From contig NC_068989.1 in NCBI RefSeq assembly GCF_001194135.2, forward strand, positions 81,754,273-81,818,272: DNA of 64,000 nucleotides, given 5' to 3'. Positions 1-47,022 of this stretch are shown one piece after another. Origin of the DNA: Octopus bimaculoides (lineage: Eukaryota). The notes beneath the pieces were generated by a model. It made no database searches. It worked only from the letters and a program-made list of their open reading frames with translations, and was not told the origin of the DNA. The translations under genes were made by a program, and so were the position numbers. Position 1 is the first letter of the stretch; every line of letters starts with the position of its first letter.

Positions 1-299
1 GTATGTANNNNNNNNNNNNNNNNNNNNNNNNNNNNNNNNNNNNNNNNNNNNNNNNNNNNNNNNNNNNNNNNNNNNNNNNNNNNNNNNNNNNNNNNNNNNN
101 NNNNNNNAGGGGTAAGAGCTCTCTAAACTTTGCCCAGGCTATATACATACATATATATATATACATGATTTGATTTTTGATACAATCTAGTTACAGCTTG
201 TGAGCTGTGGCCATGCTGGGACATCACCATTTGGTGTTGCTACATAATTTTACCTCACTAATTCTTTTTAGAAATTGACATCTGGTGCATGAGGGAGTT

Positions 300-1330: not shown

Positions 1331-1639
1331 ACTTTGTATATAAAGGGAGGTGAGATGTACTGATGAAAATGAAATGAGAAGGGAGAGTGTAGACTGAATG
1401 AGAGGTTAAAATTAGGAGAGAAAGAGACAGCGAGAGAGAAGTGAGAATAGATAAAGGAAACATTAAGTAGCATCCAAAACTTTGGTATCAACTTAATTTG
1501 CTAAAATTCTTCTTCTCACAGACTATTAATAGTAAGGAAAAGATTTGGGGGCAAAAGATGATGACAACAATCATGACAACAACAATGATGATACCAAATG
1601 TGGTTTGAAATAATTTACGTTATAATTTGTAAGTTTTTT

Positions 1640-2370
1640 TGCCTTGTTTGCTTTGTGTGAAGAAGCAATGTCCATGACCTTCGAAAGCTCTCTAAGATTG
1701 GTGAGTTTGATGCCATTAATGATTTATTAAAAACAGCTACAGGTCCACATCTGGAGAAAAGAAATGAGTTGAGAAAAAGCTCCACATGGCTTATGTCCTA
1801 AGGAGACAGGACTGGGAAATAATGGTTAGTGTGAGACTGAGAAAGTTGGATGTACCAAGAGTGATGAGAAATGGAAAGGTGAGTAGGCTCAGAGAATCTG
1901 AGTAGTGGATGTGTTACATCCGTCAGCTCTGAGGAACAGAGGCCATTACAGTAATAAGAGACAGTGAGAGGAGAGAGCACACCTGTGGACCAGAAACTGT
2001 AGTGTGTCTGTTAGTGATTTTATGTCAATCAGTCAAGTAGCTCTTCTTTGGACATAGTCCAAGACGCCTGTGTGCATAGAAGCTTCCCTGTCTCAGATGT
2101 TGGGGGCAGTACTCCTATGTGGGTTCCTTATAAGCCTTATAGTGTGTTGTCATCCTAAATCTCTTCCTTATTATTTGTAGTCAGTGAAAGGAAAAAACTT
2201 GGGGGTTGAAATATTTTTTTTGGCTCTGACGAGAAGAGCCATTCTTGGATGTGGTCCAAGCTATGCTAAGGATATGACTAGTGAGGCCCAGATTTAGAAT
2301 GACTGTGAGGATTCTAGCTGAGCACTGCTCATGTTTAGTGGGATGCAGTGAGTTGTGCCTCATTCATATG
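1640..2370 (-). mobile_element. Decayed LINE 3' fragment (second CR1/L2-type family)
   Basis: YYCNGLCSSELT...RFSEPTHLS...HYFP motifs typical of LINE ORF2 C-termini. A related piece lies at about 17070-17170 (+). Confidence 0.65.
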
Positions 2371-2565
2371 AATAGTGCTTCAGGGTTTGTTTTTTTCTTA
2401 TTGTTAGGTTGGCATAACCAACTTTGTTGAACATTTTAACAACAACCAGAATCTCATGTCAGTCATAAATTACAATCGTAGGACCAGACTTCATTCTATA
2501 AGTTTTACAGAAAGTTCAGATGCATGAATAAAGAACCTAAACAATAGAATATCAAAAGAATTTAC

Positions 2566-2664
2566 CATTTCAGAAATAATCAAATTGATGTAGACCAACC
2601 ATTCTTGAATTTTCGTGTTATCATCTGCTTGTAATAAAATTTGGTTGTTCTGTATATCTTCCAG
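2566..2664 (-). CDS. ARHGAP12/15/27-like: RhoGAP gene, PH-domain exon 3 (C-terminal helix)
   Basis: atgcttacag acceptor, LEDIQNNQILLQADDNTKIQEWLVYINLIISEM (conserved PH helix Trp), GTAAAT donor, phase 0-0. Confidence 0.9.
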
Positions 2665-3441
2665 CTGTAAGCATATAATTTGATGAATTATTAAAGCAAT
2701 TAAGGTACTTGATAATATACAGAATAGTGCTGGTAGACATAACTATCCACATATCGTTACAGCACTATCATTTTGCTATACAGCACTAACACATTAGTAT
2801 ATAGTACTATCACATTAGTAATGTATATTTATGATCTTATTAATATCTTTTAGACAAGAATATCAAATTATTTGCGTATAAAGTACTCTTTTGGTATCCT
2901 GGAATCAGATTTTTCCATATGACTTAGGGTTAAGGCCAGGAAAATGTTAGTCATCTGCAAATGCACGGTTTTCTTATTGTGAACCCATTCTGTCTTACAA
3001 GTTCAATTATATTTTTGCAAGATAAGAAAGTTAATTTGCGGAAAGAGGATCATTTCTTTATGTAGATTCACAGCATATGCTCAAAGCATGTAGAGAGCAG
3101 ACAAAAGGTTAAATCTGTTGAAAGAAACTGGTCATAAATTATCACTTTTATTTAGAAACATTTGAATGTTTTCCATTCCTTTTACTCATGGTTTGTTCAG
3201 TATCTGGTTGTTGTTATAGGTTATTTCAGGGGTAGCCATATTTACTATCACTTCAACTTCTATTGTATGTTCAACATATAAAAAAAAAATGCCAGCTATA
3301 CAGTTGTATCAGATTTAGTAGTGGAAACTGATAGAGACTTGGATGGTGGTCAAAGCAACTATCATATTCTGTAAGATACATGAAAGTGACTTTTATGAAC
3401 CATCTGTTTGAGGTAAAGAAACAATGCTGACAAAAACTTAC

Positions 3442-3625
3442 AAGGAGAACATTCTTCTTGCTTGAGATATCTTTTGAAGCATGAGAACACTTGGCTCCAC
3501 CAAGGAATATAATTTGTTCTGGATTTCCATTTTTGGCACCAGGTCCGACTGCAGCAGCACGTTGATCTTTGTAAAATGCAATATTGGAACCAAATATCTT
3601 CACATATGTTTGACTCCACTTTTTC
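3442..3625 (-). CDS. ARHGAP12/15/27-like: RhoGAP gene, PH-domain exon 2
   Basis: ctctctacag acceptor, KKWSQTYVKIFGSNIAFYKDQRAAAVGPGAKNGNPEQIIFLGGAKCSHASKDISSKKNVLL, GTAAGT donor, phase 2-0. Contains the KDxSSKKNV motif of this family's PH domain. Confidence 0.93.
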
Positions 3626-3785
3626 CTGTAGAGAGATTAGTGGAAAAAATACTGACATTCTAACTCGTGTTAGCATGGAAAGCAATGTAAAACAATGAAA
3701 AACTGGCATCAAGTATTCCAAAGCTGAATACCAGTACGAAAACACAACACTACATTTGCTACCCATAGTAGCAAATCAATTCATC

Positions 3786-4192
3786 GAGTGGCTGTGTGGT
3801 AAGTAGCTTGCTTACCAACCACATGGTTCTGGGTTCAGTCCCACTGCGTGGCACCTTGGGCAAGTGTCTTCTACTATGGCCTCGGGCCGACCAAAGCCTT
3901 GTGAGTGGATTTGGTAGACGGAAACTGAAAGAAGCTCGTTGTGTATATGTATATATATATATGTATGTGTGTGTATATGTTTGTGTGTCTGTGTTTGTCC
4001 CCCCAACATCGCTTGACAACCGATGCTGGTGTGTTTATGTCCCCATAACTCAGCAGTTCGGCAAAAGAGACCGATAGAATAAGTACTAGGCTTCCAAAGA
4101 ATAAGTCCTGGGGTCGATTTGCTCGACTAAAGGCGGTGCTCCAGCATGGCCGCAGTCAAATGACTGAAACAAGTAAAAGAGTAGAAAGAGTA
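3786..4192 (+). mobile_element. tRNA-type SINE family A, full length
   Basis: Head gagtggctgtgtggtaag...gggttcagtccc, CORE-like accttgggcaagtg, internal TA/TG microsatellite, tail gactgaaacaagtaaaagag. More than 12 copies in the window. Confidence 0.9.
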
Positions 4193-4214
4193 TTAGTTTA
4201 CAACAAAACAGCAA

Positions 4215-4580
4215 TAGGCGTCAAGCACTTGCAGCCAACAGTGCTCTCTCTGAAGAAATATAACTTCTAAGTAGAGTCCATCAAGGAACTGTATAGGGAC
4301 CACTGCTGTTTGTGGTGGCTTTCTCAGACATGCTTTCAGTCATACAGTCAGCTACTATTACAGTTATGCTGACAATACAAAAGTAAGACTAGCAGAGGAA
4401 AACCCTCATGATAATACAAAATTACAGCAAGACCTAAACACAATATAGAAGTGAGCTGAAAAAAAAAAAAAAAAAGGCAGTTCAATGCTGAGAAATTCAA
4501 AGTACACTACTATCAGCCCACAAATAGATTGCAATCAGAATACATACGACCAGTGGATATTGCAATCCCAGAGTTACAAT
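4215..4580 (+). mobile_element. LINE RT fragment (same family as 300-1330, opposite orientation)
   Basis: Degenerate VHQGTV.GPLLF / YADNTK / QFNAEKF motifs. Confidence 0.7.
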
Positions 4581-4585
4581 CACAG

Positions 4586-4706
4586 CTATCGTTCTCTTTT
4601 GCCGAACCACTAAGTTACAGGGACGTAAACACACCAGCATCGGTTGTCAAGTGATGTTGGGGGGGACATAGACACACAAACATACATATACACACACATA
4701 CATACA
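4586..4706 (-). mobile_element. SINE A fragment
   Basis: Reverse complement of the family A 3' half. Confidence 0.8.
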
Positions 4707-4726
4707 GGAAATAGTGCAATACTAAC

Positions 4727-4782
4727 CCAACTTTTTTCCCATTTTCCATAATTTTTGTTTTGTTTAAGATTCCCGTCTTGTT
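4727..4782 (-). CDS. ARHGAP12/15/27-like: RhoGAP gene, PH-domain exon 1
   Basis: tttctttgcag acceptor, NKTGILNKTKIMENGKKV-G(G), GTTAGT donor, phase 0-2. Matches the family motif GxLNxTKIxENGKKVRK. Confidence 0.9.
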
Positions 4783-5559
4783 CTGCAAAGAAATTCAAAA
4801 AATCTTTTAAGAAACAAAAGGAGCAAAAAAGAAAAAAGATTGTGTAATCAAGACTTCAGAACAGTTATAGAAATTGAGCTGTTAATCTCAAGTAGGGAGA
4901 CAATATTAGAAAACTTAGGTTTTGATCTCAGACATGTAAAGAGTGAAACCATCTTATATGACTTTACAACATTAATATACATTTAATATATATCAATATA
5001 CATCAATATAAATTGAGTTGTTTCTTTATTACTTTCAGTTTTTTGAATAGCAACCATGCTCAGATACTTCCTTCAAAGGTTTTATAGCTGATTACCCTGA
5101 TACTAGTACTTTATCTGGGACTTATTTTATCAAGCTCCATTTGTCAAATGGTAAAGTTCTCCTTGTAATAAAAGTATGTAACTTGCATAGAATTCTACAA
5201 GGTAGTTCTGTTTGATGCACAAATTCATCAGCAATCCATTATCGATATAAACATGTGCATAAACAAATATATGTATGAATAAACAACATATATACAATAT
5301 ACATGCACACACATATATATATCATTAAATCCTGTGAAATCATCCAACATGAGCTAGACAATTTCAGAGGGTCTGATGAGTTGGAGGACTTCATGGACCT
5401 TTGATGACTGCTTTGCCAAGGCATCTACAGTTGGATAACCTTTATAATGTCAGCCACTTCTCAGAATGTATTAGGTGCTTTTTTCTCTTTATATCAAGGC
5501 TCCAGCACTGGTGGGGTTGCCAAGTAATTTGCAAGACAAAAAAACATCCCTTGATTGAG

Positions 5560-6790
5560 TGAAATGAAGTAAAGAGGAAGATGACTTTATGCCAGGTGTT
5601 GTTGTAGTGCAGATATATGGCTACTCGGCACTATATAAGGTGGCTAGGAGGAGACGGGGTGATAAAGATGGTGGTAACAAGTGTCAGCATGTACTCTCTA
5701 TGCACAAGAGGATAAGTAAAGAGAGGAGCACAGAAGATCGGGAAGGATGGATGGGTAAGTCAGCCAGAGTGTGAGAGGAGATGACAGATAGTTAGAGATG
5801 GTGGTAGAGATGAATGTAGTGAACGGTGAATACAGAGTGGAGGCATTGTTGATGGTAAATAAGGATTCAGGAGAAGATGATAAGAAAAACAGGCAGCTCA
5901 GGAAGGTGGAGGTGATGAGTTGCAGAACAAAAAGCAAACAGAGCAACAGAATAACAAACTGTAGATAGATGAGAAATAAGGAGGTTATGTGTAGGGCGAG
6001 TAAAGAAGTAATGGTGGTGGGTAAACAGATGTACAGTGACAGGGATAGAGACCAGTGGTAAATAGGAGTGGATATAGTGAGTGGCAAATAAAGGTGGGGT
6101 GGGAAATCAATAATAAATATGGCGATCTTTCAATACCAGTACCAAATATCGGCCTTTTCCGTAAAAAGTGTCTTCAGCGATCTTTACCAAAGATCGGCCT
6201 TTTTCATAAAAAGTGTTGGAGGGAAAGAGGGAAATGGGTTAGGGTTTTAGGGTTAGGGTTAGTGTTTAGGGTTAGGGTTACAGTTAGGGTTACGATTACG
6301 GTTAGGGACGGAATTCCCTAACCCAAACCCTAACCCTAAAACCCTAACCGTAACCGTAACCCTAAACCCTTCAAACCCTAACCCTAAAACCCTAACCGTA
6401 ACCCTAAACCCTTCAAAAGAAATTGCGCTCTCTGTATCTCTTTTGCTTTTACGACGTCGTTTCCCTCTTTCCCTCCAACACTTTTTACAGAAAAGGCCAA
6501 TCTTTGGTACTGGTATCGAAAGATCGCCGTAGATATTGGATGGGGCTAATAATGATATATGGAAGTAATAAGACGTAGCTCAGGACAAGATAACTGTCGG
6601 CTCAATGAAAAACAAACAGGCAAGAGATGATGTCGTGTATGAGGGATGAATCTCAAAAGGAAGTGGTAGCAGAAAAAGGAGACGAAATATGTAGTCCTGC
6701 TCTCATGTAATTACAGAAGCTGGATGGTGCAATAATTAGAAAAACGATGGCAAGATGGGTGACGGAAAAATGAGTCATTTTAATACTACA
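5560..6790 (-). mobile_element. Decayed LINE endonuclease-region fragment, interrupted by the element at 6120-6529
   Basis: Degenerate ORF (FFLSSSPESLFTINN..., TYPSILPD) resembling the APE region; sequence of the same character continues on both sides of the insert. Confidence 0.45.
6120..6529. mobile_element. Fold-back MITE-like element with internal head-to-head TTAGGG/CCCTAA arrays
   Basis: Long TIRs (tggcgatctttcaataccagtaccaaa... / ...tttggtactggtatcgaaagatcgccg), TA on both flanks, degenerate telomeric repeats converging on GAATTC at 6311-6316. Confidence 0.8.
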
Positions 6791-7157
6791 CCATTACCCC
6801 AACTTCCATATGTATTTTATCTTGTTTAATTACTGCAACGTTATTATAATGTAGATAGTATACCATATTTCATTACTGTAACTACTATACCATATCTAAT
6901 TTCTCTAACCGAATCCAACTAATTCTAATTCATTATATGAACCTATGAAGGAGTATCTATATAGTTGATCAGGTTAGCAAAACTAGCAGCTAAATCTCCC
7001 TCACATCATAGCTCATTACCTTGAAAAGGGAGACATTGAATGATGTGACCTCAAACATATCTGCTAAAAAACCAAAATGATCATGACTTGAATGTATTTA
7101 ATAGACGGCTCCGTATACTCAGGATTGACCTGGGGCACAACAACAACAACAACTCAC

Positions 7158-7208
7158 CTTACAAATATCAAATGCTGTTCCCATTAATGGCTGCACTTTC
7201 TCAGGACT
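7158..7208 (-). CDS. ARHGAP12/15/27-like: RhoGAP gene, 51-nt exon preceding PH domain
   Basis: ttattttag acceptor, SPEKVQPLMGTAFDICK, GTGAGT donor. Phase 0 end joins exon 4782. Confidence 0.7.
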
Positions 7209-7998
7209 CTAAAATAATTTTTTAAAAAAACAGAAAAAAAGAACAAATTCAGAAATGTAATTCTCTACAAATGATGCCAGATCTTAGTAGATCAGGTATC
7301 AAATGTTTGGTAATCTTATATTTGGAAATATAACATTCTGTTTTTGAAATGGCTTAGTTAGTTAATGAGTGAGTGAGCAAGTGAGTAAGAGCGAGAGAGC
7401 GAGCAAGAACAAGAGCAAGAGAGAGAGAGAGAGAGTGGATTAGGTGAAGGGGGTTAAACTGGGTGACAGATTAAATCTACCGTTCTTAAATTATTATATC
7501 ATTAAAATTTTGTGAATATGATGAAGCTAGACTGAATGATCTAAGTTTCTCTAGGTTGTTGTCTCACACTTTAGAGTTTAAGGAATTAAGGGGCGATTTT
7601 TAGAATTCTACGGACCCATTCTGATTAATATTTACAAACCAATTCTTTATGATTTTTACATGTTCAGACAATTGTGCATGTGTACATGTGCGTGTGTCTA
7701 CTTTACTAGAACTAAAACAGAAGAGAAAGACTTTTTCAGTCAAGCTAATACTGCACCTTAGATTGCCACTTAACTTTATGTACCCTCACTCTCATACCAT
7801 ACATTAACACGTGGTTTTAAGAGGTGCAACCCAAAGGACTTTAGAGGGGAAACATCAGTCCATTTGTAAATTCTGAATAACTATTTACAACATCACCAAG
7901 CTTAATGCGTGTGTATATACATGTATATATATTATATATATAGTTCAAATTTACAGAAAATAAATGATGAAGACAAGTGATGGAACAACAAACAGGTG

Positions 7999-8095
<97 letters not shown>

Positions 8096-8124
8096 AACAC
8101 AAAGTGTGTGTGTGTGAGAGAGAA

Positions 8125-8485
8125 AGAGGACCTTGCAAGATTCTTTAAGTTAATAAGTAGCATTCATGAATCAACCCAATTCAATATGGTAATGAATGAA
8201 TGAAAGGGAATCCTTTTCTGGACATTCTAATAAAGAAAATGAGACAGTTGTAACCAACTTCTACTGCAAGAACACAGATACACACCAATACTTAGATTTT
8301 AAATCTTACCACCCTTCCCACAAGAAAAGAAACATATCATTCAACTTGGCAAGCTGTTTATGCTGAATAGTTACAGACACAAATAGATGAGGTAAATGAC
8401 TGGTAGAACTAAATATGTTCCCTCATAAACAGAAATATCCCAAAATGCTAATAAATTATGCCATAACCAAGGCAAAAGAAATCCT
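8125..8485 (+). mobile_element. Penelope-like retroelement RT C-terminal fragment
   Basis: EDLARFFKLISSIHESTQF, FLDILI, TNFYCKNTDTHQYLDFKSYHPSHKKRNISFNLA, QKYPKMLINYAITKAKE. Confidence 0.7.
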
Positions 8486-8830
8486 GATCTCTGCCTTATC
8501 GAGAAACACTCTCACTGAGGGTGAATACCAGAAAAAGATATGTTTTGTCGTGGAAATCAGTGGCCCACTGGACACCATGTGGTTAAAAATATACAAGAGG
8601 GAAAGGACAACTATGGGCTATTGATAAAGAATTTGCAAATCCAGAAGCCAAGACACACTTTCAGTTTCATACCTATTATCAATGGAGTAACAGGGTACAT
8701 ACCAACCTGTCTGGGGAAAAATATAGCTGAACTTGGGTTCTGAGGGGCAAAATGCAAATCCTTAATTTATACACTATAAATGATCACACTATCTGGGACT
8801 ATAAAAATCTGTGAGACCTTAAAATTTAAA
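8486..8830 (+). mobile_element. RLE-type (R4/Dong-like) non-LTR retroelement C-terminal fragment
   Basis: PDL...KKICFVVEISGPLD...FSFIPIINGVTGYIPTCLGKNIAELGF...IKICET, a restriction-like endonuclease tail pattern. Confidence 0.6.
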
Positions 8831-9789
8831 GGATGATAAACAAAATGGGGCTTTTCTTCACAACCTTGCTACCAAGCAGGTGGCCAATCAAAATTTCTTC
8901 CAAATCAAAAGGAGAAAGAGGACAGACAGACATACAGACATACATACATACATTTGTAGTAAAGAAACATGGCACTATACACTAGTGGCAGTAGGTGGGT
9001 AATTTTTTGGTTTGAATATTTCAAGAATCTCTCACAGTGCCAGTAGCTCAGACGACAAAATTTGAATCTTATTGTCCACACTGTCAAAAGTACTACAATA
9101 TCATTAGATTTACAACAACTTAGTATTAAATTGGAAACCATGCCAGCATGGAAAGCGGACATTAAACGATGATGACGATGATGATTTATAAGTTATAAAT
9201 TAAGGAGTGGTTTTACAAAATATGCCATATGTCAGCTGGAATATCACTGAATGTAATATATACAAGGTGAAGCACTAGATAATTTGACATAAGTGAGTAT
9301 TACAGAATAAAATGCATATCATGTGTAACACAGAATGTTGTTTATGTGACATAATGTTGCACACAATATGGACCATAGATGTCATGTAATATGGTGTATA
9401 GACAGGAGAGGACACAGTATAATGTATGTAACTTGTAACAAGATGGCCGGGAGCAGAATATGATATGAGGTGACACAGAATATTATATATATTTAGGTGC
9501 ACTGCATACTGCAACTCATATGACAGGAATTCCATATATTGTATAATCTAGCTGGGGTGTCATATACCATGATATAGTAGCTTGGCATTCTCAAATATAT
9601 TAAAAAGTCCTGGACTAAGTAAGTAGATTTATTCAATATTGTGAATCATTATGGAACTGGTTTCATACACTACACAAATTGATAACTATATTGATTTGTA
9701 ACTTGACGAATAGGAGTCTCACAACAGCTCGTCCATAAAACATTCAATTTACACCAGAAAATACAGAATATTAGCTGAAATTTTCACTC

Positions 9790-9965
9790 AGTTCATCATC
9801 ATTGTTTAACGTCCATTTCCCATGTTGGCATGGGTTGGATGGTTTGACAGGAGCTGTCCAAACTTCAATTGTCTTGTTTTGGCATGGTTTCAATGGTCGG
9901 ACGCCCTTCCTAACACCAACCACTTTCCAGAGTGTGCTGGATGCTTTTTATGTGCCACCTGCACA
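9790..9965 (-). mobile_element. SINE-like family B ((GAT)n tail)
   Basis: catcat-gtttaacgtcc-ttccatgttggcatgggttgga and gcccttcctaacaccaaccact motifs shared with many copies. Confidence 0.8.
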
Positions 9966-11244
9966 TTGCAATAACTTGATTTTGATTCTTACCAACAACA
10001 GATAAAAAAATAATTTACAGAAATATAGTAGATAAACACCATGGAATATAGAAAACACTTAAAATCAATAATGTCCCTTGTAAAAACATGAATACTACAA
10101 ACTTCCATTAGCCATTCAATATAAGGTTAATGATTCAATAAAACATTGCAACAAATGCTAAGATCAATCCCACTGGTAAGTTGTCACAGCTAGTAATACA
10201 AGAAACAGTATTGATAAACAGTTATTGCCTGAGAGTACAATTTCAAGATATTTGGTAAACTAATGAAATAATGCTGTTTTGATCAAATACAAAGGAAGGT
10301 AGAAACAGCCACTAAAGAATTCTGAAATCAAGAAATATCTAATACAAAATAAAGAAATCAACTTTAAAAAATAAAAGATATTTATGTTGAACAAAAAGAA
10401 AAAGTAAAACTGAATCAATTAGAATATTGAAAATGCAAGTAAGAGAAAATTATTGGCGTTAAGTGAAAATAGGAAAGATGGCAGAGCAATATATGTTCAG
10501 GTATGTTGACAGAAAGAACTTGTTGTTCAAGTGAAGAGTGGGAAAGGAAGGAAATACAGAGAAGTCTTTTAATTCAATCAATTTGATTAAAAGATGAAAA
10601 ACACCACCAAAAAAAAAAAAAAAAAAAAAAAAAACAGAATTTGGAAAAATAATGTAAATATAGAAAAATAAATTGAAGTCAAGACTGATTTCTTTATAAG
10701 CAAAAGACTGGATTATAAGAGAGGGTATGCATAACATTGCAGTGGTATTCCATGACTTTCCAAATGCGATTTGCAATCTGACTAAAATAAAACTATTTCA
10801 ACTGAGAATTGGAACCAGATGAAAGATACATGTCATAGCACAAATAGTCTGAAACTGTTTGTTCTGGTGATCCTGTTGTCTGCTAGAAGATGGTAGGGGT
10901 TCGCGCTCCAGCATGCAATATATACCGGGTACGGATTGCATCAATAAGCAGCTGGAGGAGGCTCTTTCTGATGCTAAAAATGGTACTAAAGTCAAACAGC
11001 CATATTGATGTGGTGATAAACATTACTTCTCAGTATAGTTACTACTTTCATTTCTTATAGAAATTTTCTAACTAGCTATTTTGCTTGTTTATATATATAT
11101 TTAATGTCCATTATCCATGCTGGCATGGGTTGGACAAAATATATATGTATATACATACATACATATACTATAAACATATATGTAATCCTGTGTAAACACA
11201 CACACATACGTGTGTGTGCGTATAAAACAGGCAAAAATAACGGG

Positions 11245-11644
11245 TTACTCTTTACTCTTTTACTTGTTTCAGTCATTTGACTGCAGCCATGCTGGAGCAC
11301 CGCCTTTAGTCGAGCAAATCGACCCCAGGACTCATTCTTTGGAAGCCTAGTACTTATTCTATCGGTGTCTTTTGCCAAACCGCTAAGTTATGGGGACGTA
11401 AACACACTACCATCCGTTATCAAGCAATGTTGGGAGGACAAACACAGACACACAAGCATATACACAAACATACATATACATATATATGACGGGCTTCTTT
11501 CAGTTTCCGTCTACCAAATCCACTCACAAGGTTTTGGTTGGCCCAAGGCTATAGTAGAAGACACTTGCCCAAGGTGCCATGCAGTGGGAATGAACCCGGA
11601 ATCATGTGGCTGGTAAGCAAGCTACTTACCACACAGCCACCCAT
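11245..11644 (-). mobile_element. SINE A, full length
   Basis: Reverse complement of 3786-4192. Confidence 0.9.
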
Positions 11645-12041
11645 GCACTTATATAGAACTATAGACGTTTACTTATTCATTATAGGCATACAGCTGTCTC
11701 AGATATTCACTTGGGTATGCTCATGGCTCAATAACATCAAGCAATCAATTGAATAACTGATAACATAGGGAACTGCCATCCTAGCTATCTTCTTCAAGCT
11801 GAAACAAACCCACAACGAAACTGATTTGTTCACCACATTCCTTATATATATATATATATACACAGATAGACAGACAAACAGGTAGATAAATATAACATTT
11901 GATGTACACAGTACAAAGATATGACCTATTAATAGTTTCTTATTTTGGAGATGCGGGTCCAGACAGGTTTTGTAACAGGTTTTATGGGAACTTGGATCTC
12001 AGTGTATTTATACATATAAATATAGGTGTACACACATACAA

Positions 12042-12096
<55 letters not shown>

Positions 12097-12097
12097 G

Positions 12098-12134
<37 letters not shown>

Positions 12135-12229
12135 CACTACATATGTATATAGACACAATATGGTAATTACAAAGTATTTCCCTGGTGAAGAAGATACAAC
12201 CCAATAAAGGTTAGTATTTAGTGATTTTA

Positions 12230-25163: not shown

Positions 25164-25330
25164 TAACCCTTTTGCGCCCTGATTCCTCTGTCAAATGTAA
25201 TGCTTATTTATTCTTATTGTTTTGAATTAATCCTGCATTATCTTAGAGCTGTGAGATTTTGATGATGTGATTAGAATGATATCGTAGAGTTGGTGTCAGA
25301 GGCTGTATCCAGCCAGTGTAAATGCTAGAG
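25164..25330. mobile_element. piggyBac-type MITE, one end decayed
   Basis: ttaa|cccttt terminus and internal similarity to 44692-44909. Another partial copy ends aaaggg|ttaa at about 20342. Confidence 0.6.
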
Positions 25331-26689
25331 TTGAGACATAAGTGTCTACTATTTGGGTGATGAAGTTTGGAATGGTCCACGATTGCAATAAATTATTATT
25401 TACTAGAGCTTAAATGAACTTGATCTCAGTTGATGGTTGTAAAAAGAACTTTCTTTAAAATTCAATAAATGGAATGTTTGATAAATCAGATTTTCATTGG
25501 TATGTAAAAATTAATCTACATGTAAGTTTGTAAATTAATATTTTCATAACATTTCTGAACATATTCTAATGTTAAATTTGTGACATAAGGTTTGCATTAG
25601 AGATGTAGTGACATATTTTAGAAAACTTCAGATTCAATTAGCTGGTTAATCCTGGAATTAACCTAATTCTACAAGTTTTTAGTTTGATATTAAATTTTGT
25701 GTGGTCTGCTTTTATTTGGGTCTGGGATTCAATTTTATTTTGAACATTTCAGTCTTTTACTCTTTTGCAATAAACCAAAAGATTAACCAGAAATATACGG
25801 TAATTTAATGAATTTTTTGAGGATGTTAAATTAATCTTTTCCTGCGTCCATTAGAAGTTTACGCAAACAATTTCATCTCAGATGGTTGAACCTTGTGAAG
25901 AGAAATCCAAAATGAGTGGCATGCTGCTGTTCTGCAAAGGATCCATCCAATCTATGGAACAATGGATCCATAAAGGAAAATGATTCCCGGCTAATGAATG
26001 TATATGTGTTGTAATTTCTCTGTCTATATAATGTCAAGTCATTTCTGTGTGTACATGTGAAGCCATCTGCATAATGATCAGTTCAGTGTAATGTCTGATA
26101 ATGGTTATTTAATGTTCTGCTACCTTATCAAACCATTCTTTTAACACACAGTAAACTCACCATGTTAAATCCACTGTCTTTAACAGTAATTATATTGAGT
26201 GGTTAGATTTCCCACTTGTTTAGTTGCAACAGTCAACTGCCAACTCTGCCGTAGTTGTATGTAGTTCTGTGTGTGTGTTATATCTGAGTTCTCTTGGTGT
26301 GTATGTGTCTGTGTGATTGTGTGTATGTACACAAAAAAACAAAAAATAGTTGACCTATGAAAAAGCTCAATTAACCATTTATGTCAAAGAAGGAGAAAGC
26401 TGTTGATTCTTCATGCTGGTTTGACTTGTCAGATTCGAAAGGGAAGGAGCTACATTTTTGTTCACACATTAAACAACCGGTATGTAGTTGGTGGCCTTTA
26501 AGTTGTATTGATTACACTCGGTGTAACCATGGCAATAACCGATTTCTACAGTGACCACCACTAGAATATGTAAACACTTAACACAGAATTAACAACCTAA
26601 ACTAAATAGATCTTTGAAGGCACTGTATATGAAAGGTGTCAAGAAGGGTGTGGTGGCATAGAGGTTAAGTAGAAGTGAGTTACATTGTT

Positions 26690-26990
26690 GTCATCATAAT
26701 CATCATCATCTTTTAATGTCTGTTTTCCATGCTGGCATGGGTCGGATGGTTTGACAGGAGCTGTCCAGCTGGTGAGCTGTACCAGACTCCAATTGCCTGG
26801 TTTGGCATGGTTTCTGCAACTGGATGCTCTTCCTAATGCCAACCACTTTACAGAGTGTAGTGGGTGCTTTCTTATGTTGCACTGGCACGAGTGCCTTATA
26901 CGTGGTACTGGCCCAGATATCTTATACATGACACCTCATAGATGGTACCTCATACATGGTACAGGCATAGGAGTTTATGTGACACCAGCA
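26690..26990 (-). mobile_element. SINE B
   Basis: Family B motifs with an expanded internal module array. Confidence 0.8.
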
Positions 26991-28430
26991 TGGTAGCTTT
27001 TTACATAATACTGGCTGCATTAAACATACCTCGCTATAGATATGTTAATTAACACCTTGTGTCCTTGGATAAGGCATTTAATTCAGTTTCCCTAATTAGA
27101 TTAATTAGGGACCCTTTTTATACATTACTAGTACCCCCTACAGTGTTCCTTATCCTAATTCTGGAGAAGCAGAATGCGAATACTTGTTCTATGACCTTAT
27201 AAAGAAATATTCTTAAATAAATTGAGCAGCTATGTGTGAAAGGGACAGAGTATTTGTGCAAGGTCAGTGTGCAATGATGTTGTTTTATGGTTTTGAATGA
27301 AACCTTAGTGAGGATGATAATTGTCTCTTCAAAGTTATTTCAGTTGCAGTTTTACTCACAACTCATTTTCATAACTGAGCGAATGTTTGTACAGAAGAGT
27401 GGGTCTTTAAATATGAATGTTGTATAGTGTGTCTCATTGTAGTGAGGTGTGCACATGTCTTTGTCGCATTCTAATGATAGCAATGTATCCTTATTTCTTG
27501 TGCCACACTGTCTTTGTGACGTTGTGTACACTGGTTTTGATGTCACATTCAACCATGGTTTTCCAGGCAAGTTGGTATCAAAAGGGTGAATGAGATTTTT
27601 GGAACAGCTATCTGAATAAGTCATTAAAATTAGACATGTGGAAACTACCAGAAATGCCTCACATTTTCTAATCTCTCTCTCTCTCTCACTCACACACACA
27701 CACACAAACACTCATATATATGTGTAACATAAAGAATATTGCATCACAAAGATTGGATAGGATTGGTATTCCATGCTAAGAGAAATTTCAGCCCTAGTCA
27801 TTCATACTATCTTTCTGCTGACATTCTGCACTAAACACTTCATCCGGATCTTCCCAGAACTAGAACACACTGGAATTTCACACATCTGTATGATTGCTAT
27901 AAGAAACCTATTATAGCCATTGATGGTTCTGTTTAAATTTCTAAGCACTAACACCAAACTTAAGATCTCTGTACACTATGATAATGCAACACGACATATG
28001 AGGTAGGGTGGCGAGTGGTGTCTGCAAATATGCAACTCTCCAGGCATGTGTTTAGACATGTGTTTTTGAGTTTGTATTATATATATAAACATTAATTAAA
28101 GCTTACACATGTCTATATATACGTCTCTGTATGTGTGTATACATGCATCTGTAACGCGCATGTGTATGTGTGTGTGAGATTGTTACTCCCACCACTTCTC
28201 ATTGTCCTTTAGAATTCATCAGTGATTAATAAGATAAAACTATTTTTAATAGGATTATCAGCCTCTTCAAATGTGATTAATAACTTAATCTCCCTCCAAG
28301 GATAAACTTCAAACCAAAATCATTTTCCTTCCATCCGTTTTGGCTCTTTAAAAGATTTTCCTGGTTATTTAACAATTTAGTTTCATAATTGCCTTATGTT
28401 TTATGTTGACTGATAACACTGTTTCTGCAG

Positions 28431-28693
28431 TTCGTTGGAAGACATCGTACTGAGCAGTTGCTAACTCTGTACTACACTCATGGCTAATAATATTGACAAT
28501 TATGGATATGGGCCTGCTCCTTCTGGCTGGATTTACCCTCAATTCTACCCAAATAATTATGTCAACTATCACGCAAATGCTTACATCTATGGGCAGAATT
28601 TCTCCCCAGTTCCCTATTGTAGTGAAACTTCTGTTCATAGCAACTGGCAATCTCCTGATTTAGAAGCAGTTTCTGAAAAACCAAGTGGAATAT
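28431..28693 (+). CDS. Probable alternative start exon of RhoGAP gene (5' UTR 28431-28479, CDS from ATG 28480)
   Basis: gtttctgcag acceptor, in-frame TAA upstream of ATG, 71 codons MANNIDNYGYGPAPSGWIYPQFYPNNYVNYHANAYIYGQNFSPVPYCSETSVHSNWQSPDLEAVSEKPSGI, then T|GTAAGT phase-1 donor compatible with exon 31372. Confidence 0.7.
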
Positions 28694-28934
28694 GTAAGTA
28701 GACAACTACTGGGAAATTCATATGCACATGTTCATAGATACATACATGTCTGTGTGTGCATATATGTACGTATGTATGTATGTAATGTATGTTTGTATGT
28801 ATGTATCTGTGTATATGTATATGTATGTATGTATGTATAATTCAAAACAGTTTGATGTGACCCCATGCAACTTGAAGCTTTGTAAGCTTTTTAGAGAAAT
28901 CTAGCTTGTCAGGCTCAGTTAGCTGAACCATATT

Positions 28935-29262
28935 ATCATCATCATCATCATCATCATCATCGATTAACGTCCATTTTCCATGCTGGCATGGGTTGGACAG
29001 TTCGACTGGGGACTGGGAAGCCAGGAGGCTGTACCAGGCTCCAGTCTGATCTGGCAGTGTTTCTACAGCTGGATGCCCCTCCTAACGCCAACCACTCCAA
29101 GAGTGTAGTGAGTGCCTTTTACATGCCACCGGCACAGGGGCCAGAGAAGGCTGGCAACGGCCATGATCAGTTGGTGCTTTTTATGCGCCACCGGCACGGA
29201 AGCCTGTCAAGGCGGCACTGGCATTGGCCACGTTCGGATAGTACTTTTTACATACCACTGGC
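28935..29262 (-). mobile_element. SINE B
   Basis: (CAT)n then cgattaacgtccattttccatgctggcatgggttgga. Confidence 0.85.
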
Positions 29263-30713
29263 ACAAGAATCACAACTACAATTTCCATTTGATTTTGATT
29301 TTGATGTACATTCACACACACAGACACACACACACTCACACACACACACTCACACACACACACTCACACACACACACACTCACACTCACACACACACACA
29401 CACACTCTTNNNNNNNNNNACACACACTCACACACACACACACTCACACTCACACACACACACACACACACACTCTTTTATGTATACGTTCATTATGTTA
29501 CCCACTGTTGTGAGAATTCAGTCTCTTCCTTTCATGTGTGATCCTCACCCGTCACAATTTTACAATATTCTCTATAACACTGTGTTGTTACTCAGAGTAC
29601 TGCCCCTCACCAATCACAACTCTTCAATATACTCTATGAAATACTGTTGTTATCCACAGTACAGTCCCACACCCCAAACAGTCAGCTCCAATGTTATTTG
29701 CTTTCCATATGAGTTTAACTGTTATTGTGTGCAAATCATCTGTTAATGTTGGTTATGTGCCTCTGCCTTATGCTTAGTGTAAAGTTATAAACAGTTAGCA
29801 AACAACTCAGAAAGAGCAGCTTGTGAAGAACAAAGTACAATGATATGGTATTAATTTAACACTAGTAAAGAGAATGGAGTGTCATGATGTTTTGGATGTA
29901 AATGTTTCTGATGAAAAAAAAGGGAATACAGAGAAAACTTGGGGGAAATGGAGACAGAGAGAAGCGGAGAGAATAGGACAAGAGCTAACATGGTACAGAG
30001 AGACTGGGCATTTTTTATTTACTTAAAATTACACGTGATATGCAGAGTAATAATCATTAGACTAAATGACATTTTGTGGAGAGAAAGTCAAGAGAGGCAA
30101 GTCTGAAATAAAAATCAGTTAATAATTGAATGAAGATTTATCTGCAGATGTGAGTCTGATCTTTAGTAATGCTGGGACAACTCTGAGTATGCTTCAGTCT
30201 TATTTGACCTCCTCAACAAAACACTCTCATCTGTAATTATTGAGCATAAGCTGACTGTTAGCTTTATAGAATTTCAATGAATATTGACAGGTTGGCAACT
30301 TAAATGAAAGACTGATAGGAAATTCTCTATGAAAACATAAAGTGGATGCTATTATAGCAAATTAAAGATTAATTAAAATTACAGCTGGAATGAAGGAAGA
30401 ATGTCATTAACTTTAATGATTAATTTGGGTGAAGAGAGACAAGGAGGATCACTGTGTGTGTGTGTGTGGGGGGGGGGGTGCTTGTGTACACGCGCGTGTG
30501 TGTATGAAGGCCATGATATCTGAGTAAGCTAAGTAGGCAAGTCTTACCAGATTAAAGCTATAAAAAGTAGAATACTGTTTCAACAAGTCATGTCTATTTG
30601 ATGCCCAACATGAAAAATGAGTACAAAAACCATGATAAGGAGAAAGAGGAAATGATTTCCAATGCTTTATACAAATACTAACCTAATTATTTGTGTATAT
30701 ATGTATGTATAGT

Positions 30714-31081
30714 GGAGGCGCAATGGCCCAGTGGTTAGGGCAGCGGATTCGCAGTTTCAATTCCCAGACCGGGCGTTGTGAGTGTTTATTGAGCGAAAAC
30801 ACCTAAAGCTCCACAAGGTTCAGGCAGGGGATGGTGGCGAACCCTGCTGTACTCTTTCACCACAACTTTCTCTCACTCTTACTTCCTGTTTCTGTTGTGC
30901 CTGTATTTCAAAGGGTCAGCCTTGTCACACTGTGTCACGCTGAATATCCCCGAGAACTATGTTAAGGGTACACGTGTCTGTGGAGTGCTCAGCCACTTGC
31001 ACGTTAATTTCACGAGCAAGCTGGTCTGTTGATCAGATCAACTGGAACCCTCGACATCGTAAGCAATGGAGTGCCAACAAC
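30714..31081 (+). mobile_element. tRNA-type SINE family C
   Basis: ggaggcgcaatggcccagtggttagggcagcgg head, caacaac tail; close copy at 48968-49410 (-). Confidence 0.88.
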
Positions 31082-31371
31082 ATGTATGTATATAAATACA
31101 TGTGCGCGTGATGGCCCTGTAGTTAAGAAGTTTGTTTCCTAACCACATGGTTTTGGGTTCAGTCCCTCTTTATCACCTTAAGCTGGTCTCTTCCTCTATT
31201 GCTCCAGATAGAAACTGAAACAGCCCATCATCTTTATATATATGTGTGTATGTATATATGTGTACATGTGACATAAGTATAAACATGTTTAATGAAACAC
31301 ACCTCAGTTTAATGTTAGAAAAAAACTATGTTTCTGCCAATATTATGACACTTTTCATTTGTTCTCCTCAG

Positions 31372-31551
31372 CTGATACAACGTTCGGTGCTCTCCTGAAG
31401 GATATTTGCAACAGAGATAACTCCGCAGTGCCAAACTTTGTAAAATTATGCATCAAGAGTATTGAAAACCGAGGACTTAAACAAGACGGTCTGTACCGAG
31501 TTAGTGGTAACCTCGCTGAAATACAGAAGCTGCGTCTTTCAGTAGACAACA
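31372..31551 (+). CDS. ARHGAP12/15/27-like: RhoGAP domain exon 1 (arginine finger)
   Basis: ttctcctcag acceptor, DTTFGALLKDICNRDNSAVPNFVKLCIKSIENRGLKQDGLYRVSGNLAEIQKLRLSVDN, GTAAGT donor, phase 1-1. Catalytic GLYRVSG intact. Confidence 0.97.
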
Positions 31552-33381: not shown

Positions 33382-33522
33382 TTAATGCTAACAGTCGATT
33401 CAATTTGGATGATGAATGCTGGGATATTCACACATTAACTGGGGCCCTGAAACTCTTTTTCAGAGAACTGAAAGAGCCTTTGATTCCATTCAATAAGTTT
33501 GATAAACTAATGGAAATTGTCA
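33382..33522 (+). CDS. ARHGAP12/15/27-like: RhoGAP domain exon 2
   Basis: tttcatttcag acceptor, NANSRFNLDDECWDIHTLTGALKLFFRELKEPLIPFNKFDKLMEIV, GTAAGT donor, phase 1-1. Confidence 0.97.
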
Positions 33523-35291: not shown

Positions 35292-35406
35292 AAGCAGAAA
35301 GTGCTACAAAACGTGAAGAGAATTTAAGGAAATACAAAGAAATTATTCATAGCTTTCCCAAGTGCCACTTTGAGACACTTAAGATGCTGCTTCAACACCT
35401 TCTAAG
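35292..35406 (+). CDS. ARHGAP12/15/27-like: RhoGAP domain exon 3
   Basis: tgttttcacag acceptor, AESATKREENLRKYKEIIHSFPKCHFETLKMLLQHLL-AG, GTCAGC donor, phase 1-2. Confidence 0.95.
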
Positions 35407-36078: not shown

Positions 36079-36247
36079 AGTAATAAAATTATCTGAACAC
36101 AACCGAATGCTCACTCAAAACGTGGCTATTGTCTTTGGACCAACATTGATGTGGCCAGAACGGGAATTACACAATCTTGCCATTAGTATCACCTACCAGA
36201 GCCAAATTGTCCAATTTCTTCTTCAAAACTATGCAAGCATCTTTTGA
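36079..36247 (+). CDS. ARHGAP12/15/27-like: RhoGAP domain terminal exon
   Basis: catttcag acceptor, VIKLSEHNRMLTQNVAIVFGPTLMWPERELHNLAISITYQSQIVQFLLQNYASIF*. NRM..N.AIVFGPTL motif; TGA at 36245-36247. Confidence 0.97.
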
Positions 36248-42879: not shown

Positions 42880-44350
42880 TATATACGTAAGTGAGGTTGT
42901 GTGTGTGTGTAAACCTGCATAACTTCTGAAGTTCACAAGCGATTTTCTCCAAACTGGGAACTTAGATTATTTATGTACCAGAGATGGTTTTAGACTCTTA
43001 AAATGTTTCACATAACAAGTAACGAGCCCCCTGGGAGCAGAAATACACTTTCCTGAGTTACATTGAGAAGGGAGGTAACTTTCAGAAATTGATTGTCTCC
43101 CTTATATCCATTAGTCAAAAAATTATCGCAGTTTCAATTGGCTGTGTGAAAGAGCAATACTGACTCCAGTACTGTAAGTAAAATTAATGAGCAGCTGCTG
43201 CAGTACCTTCCCAGCAGTCCTCACATCTATAAGTCACTTGATACAATCCCAGATTCAGAAGAGGTGATAAACTATCCAACAGAATTTCTCAATTCATTGG
43301 AGCCTCCAGGACTACACAGATTAGAATTTACAGTGGGAACTCCAGTAATGTTATTGAGGAATTTGGATCCTGGTGGTAAAGAAGATGATATCACATGTTA
43401 TTGAGGTCAATATTCTCTCTGGATGTGGAAAAGATTTTCATACCCAGAATTCCTCTCATTCCATTGGGAGCAGAAATTCCTTTTTTATTCAGAAGAGTGC
43501 AATCTCCTGTTCGTATCAGCTTTGCAATGTCTATCAATAAATCCCAGGGTCAAACACTGTTCATGGTAGAACTTCAGTTGGAAGAGTCATGCTTCTCACA
43601 TGAGCATTTAAATGTTGGCTGCTCTCGAGTGGGATGTAAAAAAAAATCTTTTCGCATTTGTTCCACAAGGGAAAACAAAAAATATTGTTTACCAAGAGAA
43701 TTTGTAGGATTTACTACATCCTACAATGCACTATGGTATCCACTGCTCTTTGTGGATGGTGAAGATGGATACCATTTTGGCATATTCTCCAATTACTCTC
43801 ACCAACAACGTGGTCAGCCAATAAGCCTTATTACTACATATTCTCAGTTTATGTTTCTTATTCTACAGCCACACCAGCAATCCAATGTCAACCCTTCGCC
43901 TTCTGCATCATTTCAACAGGTCACTTCCCCATTGCTGTCTCCCATTGCAGCTCCCATTTATATACAATATCTCCATTACACCTGCAGCCCCTTTCTGGAA
44001 TGGACCCATTTACGTACAATCTTCATTACACCAACATCCATTTGACTGTCAATAATACAATGGGTTATGTTAGACACTGACCACCGCAAAGAAGAGTATA
44101 TCCACTGATAGCTTTTCAGTGCATTCAAAAATCACATATACCCCACCCCCAATTGTCCATGACAGGTTAGGGCCTGGAATCCTCCAAACAGATGCATGAC
44201 ATATCACTTAGATGAGTTAGCCCATCATTTACTCCACAAATGTTTTGTTGTCAATGCTGCACTTTCCCATATCACATGTTTCAACATAACTGTAATATAT
44301 GCACAAACTATACCATTTTAATCCCAAGCAGTGCTGGGTATCTCTGCTAG
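42880..44350 (+). mobile_element. Rearranged Helitron remnant with intact 3' end
   Basis: YPTEFLNSLEPPG, VMLLRNLDP, FIPRIPLIP, FAMSINKSQGQT, SRVG. Hairpin ccca..tggg and CTAG at 44347-44350 followed by T. Confidence 0.88.
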
Positions 44351-45361: not shown

Positions 45362-46507
<1,146 letters not shown>

Positions 46508-46731
46508 TTAGAATTTCAGTAAAGAATATTTTAACAAAATGAAATCTTATTTTTAACAATAAAATTTATAGCAGGGCATCATTTGATTACATATTAACAA
46601 TTATAAATTAGGAACAATTATAAATTAGTAAATTGAAGGAAGTGGCTGAACCATTTAAGTATTCAAAATGGATACTAATTTTATGTTTAATTGTGAGTTT
46701 TCGTAGTTTAATTAACCAAACAATCAGATTA

Positions 46732-47022
<291 letters not shown>

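What the first reader, a model, noticed from the sequence alone, without database searches (positions are those of the whole stretch)
28431..28693. Hidden alternative start exon predicting a PH-less GAP isoform with a novel Tyr/Asn/Pro-rich N-terminus
Inside the 8.9-kb intron lies a non-repetitive exon with an acceptor, an in-frame upstream stop, an ATG, 71 open codons and a consensus GTAAGT donor in the exact phase needed for the first GAP exon (...KPSGI-S-DTTFG...). It cannot serve as a cassette after exon 22461 because that frame hits TGA. The predicted protein lacks the PH domain and upstream regions and instead has a low-complexity aromatic N-terminus (YGYGPAPSGW, YPQFYPNNY), a composition associated with prion-like or condensate-forming regions (inference).
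Basis: partly seen in the sequence, partly recalled or inferred. Interest (0 to 1): 0.72.

Follow-up and report, generated by a model that had tools for sequence, protein, structure and literature searches.

The report
Annotated alternative start exon of octopus ARHGAP15
The "hidden" exon is really there, but it is already in NCBI's annotation as the first coding exon of isoform X2 of an Octopus bimaculoides Rac/Rho GTPase-activating protein, a common kind of short isoform, so the finding is largely ordinary.

Summary
Read as a cassette after 22461, it gives IRWKTSY*.

It is not hidden. Splicing 28480-28693 to the four RhoGAP exons translates exactly to RefSeq XP_052826782.1, [quoted passage not shown] (272 aa). 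The window is GCA_001194135.2, chromosome CM046609.1.

The first 57 residues have no detectable homologue among 1.84 billion representative proteins, and AlphaFold2 predicts them to be disordered. The last 14 residues (SPDLEAVSEKPSGI) are not novel. They reproduce the pre-GAP motif conserved in ARHGAP12/15/27 (RPxLxxLxEK-G-x-I-K) at the homologous position. This argues for a real coding exon rather than intron noise.

The prion-like or condensate idea is untested. The biased stretch is only 47 residues long.

Side finding: the PH-domain exons of this gene lie on the opposite strand, in a 19.4-kb block between two gaps of exactly 100 N. RefSeq annotates them as a separate 170-aa gene. This is probably a scaffold misorientation that splits one 450-aa PH+RhoGAP gene.

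Transcript support and conservation in other cephalopods could not be tested here.

The parts
28431..28693 (+). Alternative 5' coding exon (263 nt) of the ARHGAP15-like gene. It is the first coding exon of RefSeq isoform X2.
   Evidence: The chain 28480-28693 + 31372-31551 + 33382-33522 + 35292-35406 + 36079-36247 translates exactly to P0001 (XP_052826782.1).
28411..28430 (+). Acceptor-like site (tgataacactgtttctgcag), about as good as the gene's constitutive acceptors. Whether it is used is unknown.
   Evidence: splice-site table.
28462..28464 (+). In-frame TAA upstream of the start codon.
28480..28482 (+). Start codon of isoform X2. It is the first ATG in the exon; context CTCATGG, with no purine at -3.
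28480..28620 (+). Tyr/Asn/Pro-rich segment, residues 1-47: 9 Tyr, 8 Asn, 6 Pro and 1 charged residue. Predicted disordered, with no homologues.
28651..28693 (+). Residues 58-71 (SPDLEAVSEKPSGI). This is a copy of the conserved pre-GAP motif RPxLxxLxEK-G-x-I-K of ARHGAP12/15/27.
28694..28699 (+). GTAAGT donor, phase 1.
31372..31551 (+). RhoGAP exon 1, shared by both isoforms (begins DTTFG; contains the arginine finger in GLYRVSGN).
33382..33522 (+). RhoGAP exon 2.
35292..35406 (+). RhoGAP exon 3.
36079..36247 (+). RhoGAP exon 4, including the TGA stop.
22339..22461 (+). Canonical exon that the alternative exon replaces. It ends with the same motif (RPTMESLEAKGILK) and in the same phase 1.
19752..19887 (+). 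Canonical linker exon (PTQEDS...). RefSeq X1 extends it upstream to ATG 19674, through its own acceptor.

Best explanation
Exon 28431-28693 is a genuine alternative 5' coding exon of the Octopus bimaculoides ARHGAP15-like gene, a Rac/Rho GTPase-activating protein of the ARHGAP12/15/27/9 group. Transcripts that carry it start translation at ATG 28480 and splice from 28693 to 31372. They encode a 272-aa protein with three parts: a 57-residue disordered Tyr/Asn/Pro-rich head, the exon's own copy of the short conserved segment that precedes the GAP domain, and the complete catalytic RhoGAP domain.

The PH domain and the linker are left out. The short form should therefore keep GAP activity but lose PH/phosphoinositide-dependent targeting.

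Shown here: the anatomy, the identity with RefSeq isoform X2, an intact GAP domain, predicted disorder of the head, and the motif match.

Inferred: that the exon is transcribed, either from an intronic promoter or behind a non-coding leader exon; that it is translated; and that losing the PH domain changes localisation or regulation.
For: - The spliced product is identical to XP_052826782.1, isoform X2. From general knowledge of NCBI's Gnomon pipeline, extra isoforms are normally built from transcript alignments. This was not checked here.
- The ATG is the first in the exon, has an in-frame stop upstream, and its ORF reaches a consensus donor in the one phase that fits. About 0.05 such ORFs are expected by chance per intron and phase.
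- Residues 58-71 match the family's pre-GAP motif at the homologous position. The PSSM score is 11.6 bits. Only 2 chance hits occur among 72,276 six-frame 10-mers of the window, and 0 of 200,000 shuffles reach the score.
- HMMER independently extends its alignments to the solved structures 6GVC (ARHGAP12) and 3BYI (ARHGAP15) into these residues.
- The composition is unlike that of chance ORFs in the window: few K, L, F, I or R.
- The RhoGAP domain is complete (Pfam E = 2e-44), all invariant columns including the arginine finger are present, and AF2 pLDDT is above 90.
- Precedent: a human ARHGAP15 short isoform from an intronic LTR32 promoter lacks the PH domain and keeps the RhoGAP domain (bioRxiv 10.64898/2026.05.19.726397). 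Many vertebrate ARHGAP12/15/27 models have RhoGAP only.
Against:
- Apart from P0001 itself, residues 1-57 have no genuine homologue among 1.84 billion representative proteins; the three other hits (P0123-P0125) are repeat proteins that score through many short matches. No other cephalopod ARHGAP15 appeared in the searches at all, so conservation is untested.
- The Kozak context is weak (C at -3).
- The exon has a good acceptor, which a true first exon does not need. That leaves room for cassette use.
- AF2 confidence for the motif segment is only about 54.
Confidence: 0.72

Rival explanations
1. Frame-breaking cassette ("poison") exon. The exon is included between 22461 and 31372 in canonical transcripts and introduces a premature stop (IRWKTSY*). 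This yields either a target for nonsense-mediated decay or a truncated protein without the GAP domain. On this reading the 272-aa isoform X2 is only the longest downstream ORF picked by the annotation pipeline and is hardly translated.
For: - The acceptor is as strong as those of the constitutive exons.
- The 263-nt length is not a multiple of 3.
- A TGA falls 8 codons into the exon in the canonical frame.
- The Kozak context is weak.
- The exon structure of the RefSeq mRNA could not be seen.
Against: A non-coding cassette would need two coincidences. It would need a 71-codon ATG-initiated ORF ending in the right phase; the chance of 71 stop-free codons at this base composition is about 1-2% (my own estimate from base composition, not a tool result). 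It would also need the family's pre-GAP motif at the homologous position (p about 1e-4 to 2e-3).
Confidence: 0.15
2. Chance intronic ORF that is not expressed. The RefSeq model would then be a prediction artefact, for example an ab initio extension of a weak alignment.
For: - ORFs of this size next to GTRAGT do occur by chance. One example lies on the minus strand at 27624-27360 (88 codons).
- There are no homologues for residues 1-57.
Against: - Expected number is about 0.05.
- The motif match at the junction.
- The atypical composition.
- An independent annotation pipeline chose the same exon.
Confidence: 0.05
3. One reading: the Tyr/Asn/Pro-rich head is a prion-like, condensate-forming domain that gives the short GAP a new mode of localisation.
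For: In the first 47 residues, 26% are aromatic, 66% are Y/N/Q/G/S/P and only 1 is charged. The region is predicted disordered.
Against: - The stretch is only 47 residues. From general knowledge, known prion-like domains are usually 60-200 residues.
- N+Q make up only 21% of it.
- It has no homologues or repeats.
- No predictor or experiment was run.
Confidence: 0.07

Closest known systems
RefSeq XP_052826782.1, rho GTPase-activating protein 15 isoform X2 [Octopus bimaculoides]
   Same: Identical over all 272 residues. It has the same start codon, the same 28693^31372 junction and the same downstream exons.
   Different: Nothing differs at the sequence level. It is an automated model with no published characterisation that I could find.
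Human ARHGAP15 short isoform driven by an intronic LTR32 promoter (bioRxiv 10.64898/2026.05.19.726397)
   Same: An internal start within the gene yields a protein that lacks the N-terminal PH domain and keeps the intact RhoGAP domain.
   Different: The human promoter is a retroviral LTR. Here the exon and about 2 kb around it are single copy in the window and no transposable-element origin is evident. The octopus exon also adds 71 new residues, including a second copy of the pre-GAP motif.
GAP-only models of vertebrate ARHGAP12/15/27/9
   Same: Examples are P0035, P0053, P0091 and P0093, which Pfam assigns RhoGAP only. They share the same domain loss.
   Different: Their N-termini are unrelated to the octopus head, and most are uncharacterised automated models.
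Alternative 5' exons that each end in the same structural motif (resembling mutually exclusive duplicated exons)
   Same: The canonical exon 22339-22461 and the alternative exon both end, in phase 1, with an RP/SP-x-[LM]-x-x-[LV]-x-x-K...G-I motif before the same acceptor.
   Different: There is no DNA similarity between the two exons (p = 0.55), and pairwise protein similarity is weak (p = 0.075). Duplication is therefore not shown. It could be an old duplication or convergence.
Prion-like low-complexity domains of FUS and hnRNPA1
   Same: Aromatic-rich, charge-poor and predicted disordered.
   Different: The octopus stretch is far shorter (47 residues), is not G/S/Q-dominated, and has no repeat structure. 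Membership was not established.

Membership tests
RhoGAP domain proteins (Pfam PF00620) | Domain match above Pfam's gathering score | tested here: met
   P0001 residues 92-244, 151 bits against a cut-off of 24.5, E = 2.3e-44.
RhoGAP domain proteins (Pfam PF00620) | Catalytic arginine finger and other invariant residues present | tested here: met
   R114 (in GLYRVSGN), K155, R159 and N225 are invariant columns across 40 family members including P0001.
ARHGAP12/15/27/9 subgroup | Closest relatives and closest solved structures belong to this subgroup | tested here: met
   the best named hits are ARHGAP15, 12, 27 and 9; best PDB matches are 6GVC (ARHGAP12, E = 1.6e-57) and 3BYI (ARHGAP15, E = 9e-55).
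ARHGAP12/15/27/9 subgroup | PH domain N-terminal to a C-terminal RhoGAP domain | tested here: inconclusive
   Isoform X2 has no PH domain. PH exons exist in the window (Pfam PH E = 1e-10), but on the minus strand in a block bounded by gaps. Joined in silico to the GAP exons they give an in-frame 450-aa PH+RhoGAP protein.
ARHGAP12/15/27/9 subgroup | Conserved pre-GAP segment RRPxLxxLxEKGxIKDxVFG | tested here: met
   The canonical exon has RPTMESLEAKGILK (23.9 bits). The alternative exon has SPDLEAVSEKPSGIS (11.6 bits, background about 3e-5 per position)..
Alternative first coding exon / alternative-promoter isoform | Own ATG with an upstream in-frame stop, and a donor in a phase compatible with the shared exon | tested here: met
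Alternative first coding exon / alternative-promoter isoform | Transcription start or leader exon, and junction reads | not testable with these tools
   No RNA-seq, CAGE or mRNA records were available. The only indirect support is the existence of the RefSeq model.
Alternative first coding exon / alternative-promoter isoform | Reading frame conserved in related species | not testable with these tools
   No cephalopod orthologue appeared in any collection. One search failed for technical reasons.
Poison (NMD-inducing) cassette exon | Premature stop or frameshift when the exon is included between constitutive exons | tested here: met
   IRWKTSY* after 22461; the exon length of 263 nt is not a multiple of 3.
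Poison (NMD-inducing) cassette exon | Actual use of the 22461^28431 junction | not testable with these tools
   No transcript data.
Prion-like / phase-separating low-complexity domain | Long biased core (about 60 residues or more) rich in N/Q or G/S/Y | tested here: not met
   the biased stretch is residues 1-47, with N+Q at 21%. Residues 48-71 are ordinary or motif sequence. PLAAC and PAPA were not available.
Prion-like / phase-separating low-complexity domain | Predicted intrinsic disorder and depletion of charged residues | tested here: met
   pLDDT 37-54 for residues 1-70, with no secondary structure before residue 61; 1 charged residue in 47.

The most novel reading that the evidence does not exclude
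The head (residues 1-57) is a lineage-specific coding sequence, possibly born de novo, that octopods grafted onto a Rac GAP. The same exon would have acquired, by old duplication or by convergence, its own copy of the structural segment that caps the GAP domain. The aromatic-rich disordered head would then retarget the PH-less GAP, for example through multivalent aromatic contacts or phosphotyrosine docking.
Probability: 0.08. Interest if true: 0.5.

Novelty: already known. Interest (0 to 1): 0.17.

Why it matters
For the finding itself, little. A PH-less short isoform of an ARHGAP15-type GAP made from an internal start is an established pattern, and this one is already in RefSeq.

Two by-products are useful:

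1. The alternative exon carries its own copy of the conserved pre-GAP segment. This is sequence-level evidence that the short isoform is under protein-level constraint, and it marks that segment as functionally required next to the GAP domain.
2. The locus shows a probable scaffold misorientation that splits one PH+RhoGAP gene into two RefSeq genes and gives isoform X1 a spurious N-terminus. That is worth correcting for anyone using this octopus gene set.

Tried and rejected
- Word-indexed protein search with the 94-residue junction peptide. It returned nothing, although P0001 contains the query, so this is a limit of the index and not evidence of absence.
- Exact-protein contig look-ups for P0001, P0126 and P0122. 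None is on record, because only the longest product per gene is held and the older assembly is absent.
- Exhaustive HMMER search with the 71 residues. The only other hits were three repeat proteins (bacterial FG-GAP-like, a Cys-rich repeat protein and one other) that score through many short matches. I rejected them as spurious.
- Metagenome scan: no relative found.
- Exon-duplication origin. DNA local alignment between the canonical and alternative exons is no better than shuffles (p = 0.55). Pairwise protein similarity gives p = 0.075. Duplication is not demonstrated.
- Microsatellite origin of the Tyr-rich stretch. There is no tandem repeat inside the exon; (TATG)n starts 70 nt after the donor.
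- Pfam scan of the 72-residue head: no family.
- Literature search for the assembly method. It gave no direct source, so the statement that 100-N gaps mark scaffolder joins rests on general knowledge.

Full report
**1. The observation**

- A pyrimidine-rich tract and ctgcag end at 28430.
- The exon 28431-28693 is 263 nt and has a 49-nt leader without any ATG.
- An in-frame TAA lies at 28462.
- ATG at 28480 is followed by 71 open codons plus one base.
- A GTAAGT donor lies at 28694.
- The leftover T joins CT of exon 31372 to make Ser, giving ...KPSGI-S-DTTFG.

If the exon is read after exon 22461 (phase 1), it gives IRWKTSY and then TGA. The intron it sits in (22462-31371) is 8,910 nt.

The exon is single copy in the window, whereas six other intron segments are interspersed repeats. 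It contains no tandem repeat.

As a chance check, I counted every ATG-initiated ORF of at least 60 codons that runs into a GTRAGT donor. This is the only one on the + strand of the 64-kb window. The minus strand has seven: two in a tubulin gene, three in a microsatellite, and two chance hits. That gives roughly 0.05 expected per 8.9-kb intron in one given phase. The signal is suggestive but not conclusive by itself.

**2. What it is**

A search with the predicted spliced product returned a protein that is 99% identical to my approximate query over its full length. It is P0001, 272 aa, NCBI [quoted passage not shown], accession XP_052826782.1. It starts MANNIDNYGYGPAPSGW... and contains ...KPSGISDTTFG.

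Concatenating 28480-28693, 31372-31551, 33382-33522, 35292-35406 and 36079-36247 translates exactly to that protein plus a stop. The window is identical to GCA_001194135.2, chromosome CM046609.1, at about 81,754,273-81,818,272.

So the exon is real as an annotated feature and is not hidden. From general knowledge of NCBI's pipeline, additional isoforms are normally built from transcript alignments. I could not open the mRNA record to verify this.

**3. The protein**

Pfam finds only a RhoGAP domain, at residues 92-244 with E = 2e-44. All invariant family columns are present, including the arginine finger R114. The closest solved structures are the GAP domains of human ARHGAP12 (6GVC) and ARHGAP15 (3BYI).

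AlphaFold2, run with a 40-sequence alignment, models the GAP domain at pLDDT above 90. Residues 1-70 score 37-54 and have no secondary structure before a short helix at 61-64.

The first 47 residues hold 9 Tyr, 8 Asn, 6 Pro and a single charged residue. This composition is unlike chance ORFs of the window: only microsatellite translations are as rich in Y/N/P, and almost none are as poor in K/L/F/I/R.

An exhaustive HMMER search of 1.84 billion representative proteins with the 71 residues found only P0001 and three repeat proteins that score through many short matches. A metagenome scan found nothing.

**4.

The last 14 residues of the exon are not novel. In the family alignment, SPDLEAVSEKPSGIS lines up with the conserved segment RRPxLxxLxEK-GxIK that precedes DxVFG in ARHGAP12/15/27/9. 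Compare ARHGAP12 RPTLQAVREKGYIK and the octopus canonical exon RPTMESLEAKGILK.

I built a position-specific matrix from 19 distinct family sequences, excluding the octopus protein.
- It scores SPDLEAVSEK at 11.6 bits.
- Among 72,276 stop-free 10-mers of the six-frame translation of the window, only four reach that score: the canonical exon, this exon and two chance hits.
- None of 200,000 shuffles of the 71 residues reaches it at the homologous offsets.

HMMER independently starts its alignments to 6GVC and 3BYI at residue 58 or 59, inside this exon.

Both alternative upstream exons therefore hand the same short structural element to the GAP domain, in the same splice phase. That is hard to reconcile with a non-coding intronic exon and is the best evidence here for protein-level constraint.

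How the motif arose is open. The two exons share no DNA similarity (p = 0.55), and pairwise protein similarity is weak (p = 0.075).

**5. How it most likely works**

My best reading (about 0.72) is that this is an alternative 5' coding exon. It would be transcribed either from a promoter inside the 8.9-kb intron or behind a non-coding leader exon. It gives a GAP-only isoform that keeps catalysis and the pre-GAP cap but lacks the PH domain and linker.

ArhGAP15 is reported to be regulated in a PIP3-dependent manner and to restrain Rac (PMC4829101). Loss of the PH domain should therefore uncouple the short form from phosphoinositide-dependent recruitment. This is an inference.

A direct precedent exists in humans. 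An intronic LTR32 promoter drives a truncated ARHGAP15 that lacks the PH domain and keeps the RhoGAP domain (bioRxiv 10.64898/2026.05.19.726397). Many vertebrate family models are also GAP-only.

**6. Rivals**

- Poison cassette exon (about 0.15). The acceptor is as good as the constitutive ones, the length is not a multiple of three, and inclusion after 22461 stops translation after eight codons. The annotation pipeline would still report the longest downstream ORF. Against it: a non-coding cassette would need both a 71-codon ORF in the right phase and the motif match.
- Unexpressed chance ORF (about 0.05). Comparable chance ORFs do exist, for example on the minus strand at 27624-27360.
- Prion-like or condensate domain (about 0.07, as a refinement of the main reading). 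Only composition and predicted disorder support it, and the biased stretch is 47 residues.

**7. The PH domain and the assembly**

No PH exon lies on the + strand. Five exons on the minus strand (17866-17768, 7208-7158, 4782-4727, 3625-3442, 2664-2566) encode an N-terminal region plus a PH domain. RefSeq annotates them as a separate 170-aa gene, XP_014787043.2, which ends in a seven-residue tail, MWTCSCF, from 1750-1730. In the chromosome record the two genes sit head to head.

Several observations point to one gene split by the assembly.
- The block that holds the PH exons (108-19513) is bounded by two gaps of exactly 100 N.
- The last PH exon ends in phase 0, and exon 19752 starts in phase 0.
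- Joined, they give an in-frame 450-aa PH+RhoGAP protein with the architecture of other molluscan ARHGAP15 proteins.
- No GAP exons follow the PH exons on their own strand within 10 kb.
- RefSeq isoform X1 (313 aa) starts at an ATG 60 nt after the gap and reads through the acceptor of exon 19752. Its first 26 residues look artefactual.

I conclude, by inference, that the block is probably misoriented in the scaffold and that one gene has been split into two models.

**8. Verdict**

It is wrong on "hidden", incomplete on the N-terminus, and unsupported on the prion-like idea. The feature is already known as an automated annotation and belongs to a common kind. Interest is low.

Neither the transcript data nor the cross-species comparison that would settle the remaining doubts is accessible with these tools.

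Noticed in passing
window 108-19513, minus strand; exons 17866-17768, 7208-7158, 4782-4727, 3625-3442, 2664-2566: The N-terminal and PH-domain exons of the same ARHGAP15-like gene lie on the opposite strand, in a block bounded by two gaps of exactly 100 N (8-107 and 19514-19613). RefSeq annotates them as a separate 170-aa gene, XP_014787043.2. Joined to the GAP exons they give an in-frame 450-aa PH+RhoGAP protein. This is probably a scaffold misorientation.
   Followed up: yes
window 19674-19751, + strand: RefSeq isoform X1 (XP_014782149.2, 313 aa) starts at an ATG 60 nt after the 100-N gap and reads through the acceptor of exon 19752. Its first 26 residues (MSCVCIHPVTLIIEKPLSHVCYFSIQ) are likely intron sequence. 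In the same way, the PH-only model ends in a seven-residue tail, MWTCSCF, from 1750-1730.
   Followed up: partly
window 45365-47022, minus strand: An apparently intact alpha-tubulin gene lies convergent with the GAP gene. It has at least two exons (47022-46732 and 46507-45365), ends in EEEGEEY and matches Pfam Tubulin and Tubulin_C. It is annotated as a 451-aa product in the NCBI record.
   Followed up: partly
window 13757-15765, + strand: PIF1-like helicase ORF fragments (Pfam PIF1 E = 2e-28; Pif1_2B E = 2e-11) are interrupted by the 156-N gap. From general knowledge this is typical of a Helitron-type transposon remnant. A similar-looking ORF at 43150-44042 gave no Pfam hit.
   Followed up: partly
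window 932-1405, minus strand: Reverse-transcriptase fragment (Pfam RVT_1, E = 2e-7), probably a retroelement remnant.
   Followed up: partly
window 23719-23944, 24290-24617, 26687-26912, 28932-29257, 31124-31261 and other places in the window: A short interspersed repeat family is present in about 5-10 copies in the window. Its translations recur as ...FNV.FPCWHG.DGLTGAVQ.../...HAGMGWT.... One copy starts about 240 nt after the alternative exon's donor. The exon itself is outside the repeat.
   Followed up: partly
window 22462-23250 and 28763-28838: Microsatellites directly follow both alternative donors. A roughly 0.8-kb CA-rich tract after exon 22461 gives long His/Thr ORFs. A (TATG)n array of about 19 copies starts 70 nt after the alternative exon's donor.
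   Followed up: partly
window 27624-27360, minus strand: An 88-codon ATG-initiated ORF ends at a GTRAGT donor-like site and resembles nothing. It is a useful example of how long chance ORF-plus-donor combinations can be in this sequence.
   Followed up: no
searches: No ARHGAP15 orthologue from any other cephalopod appeared in the protein collections. The next best hit after O. bimaculoides is a gastropod protein at 52% identity. The absence of homologues of the 71-residue head therefore says nothing about conservation within cephalopods.
   Followed up: no
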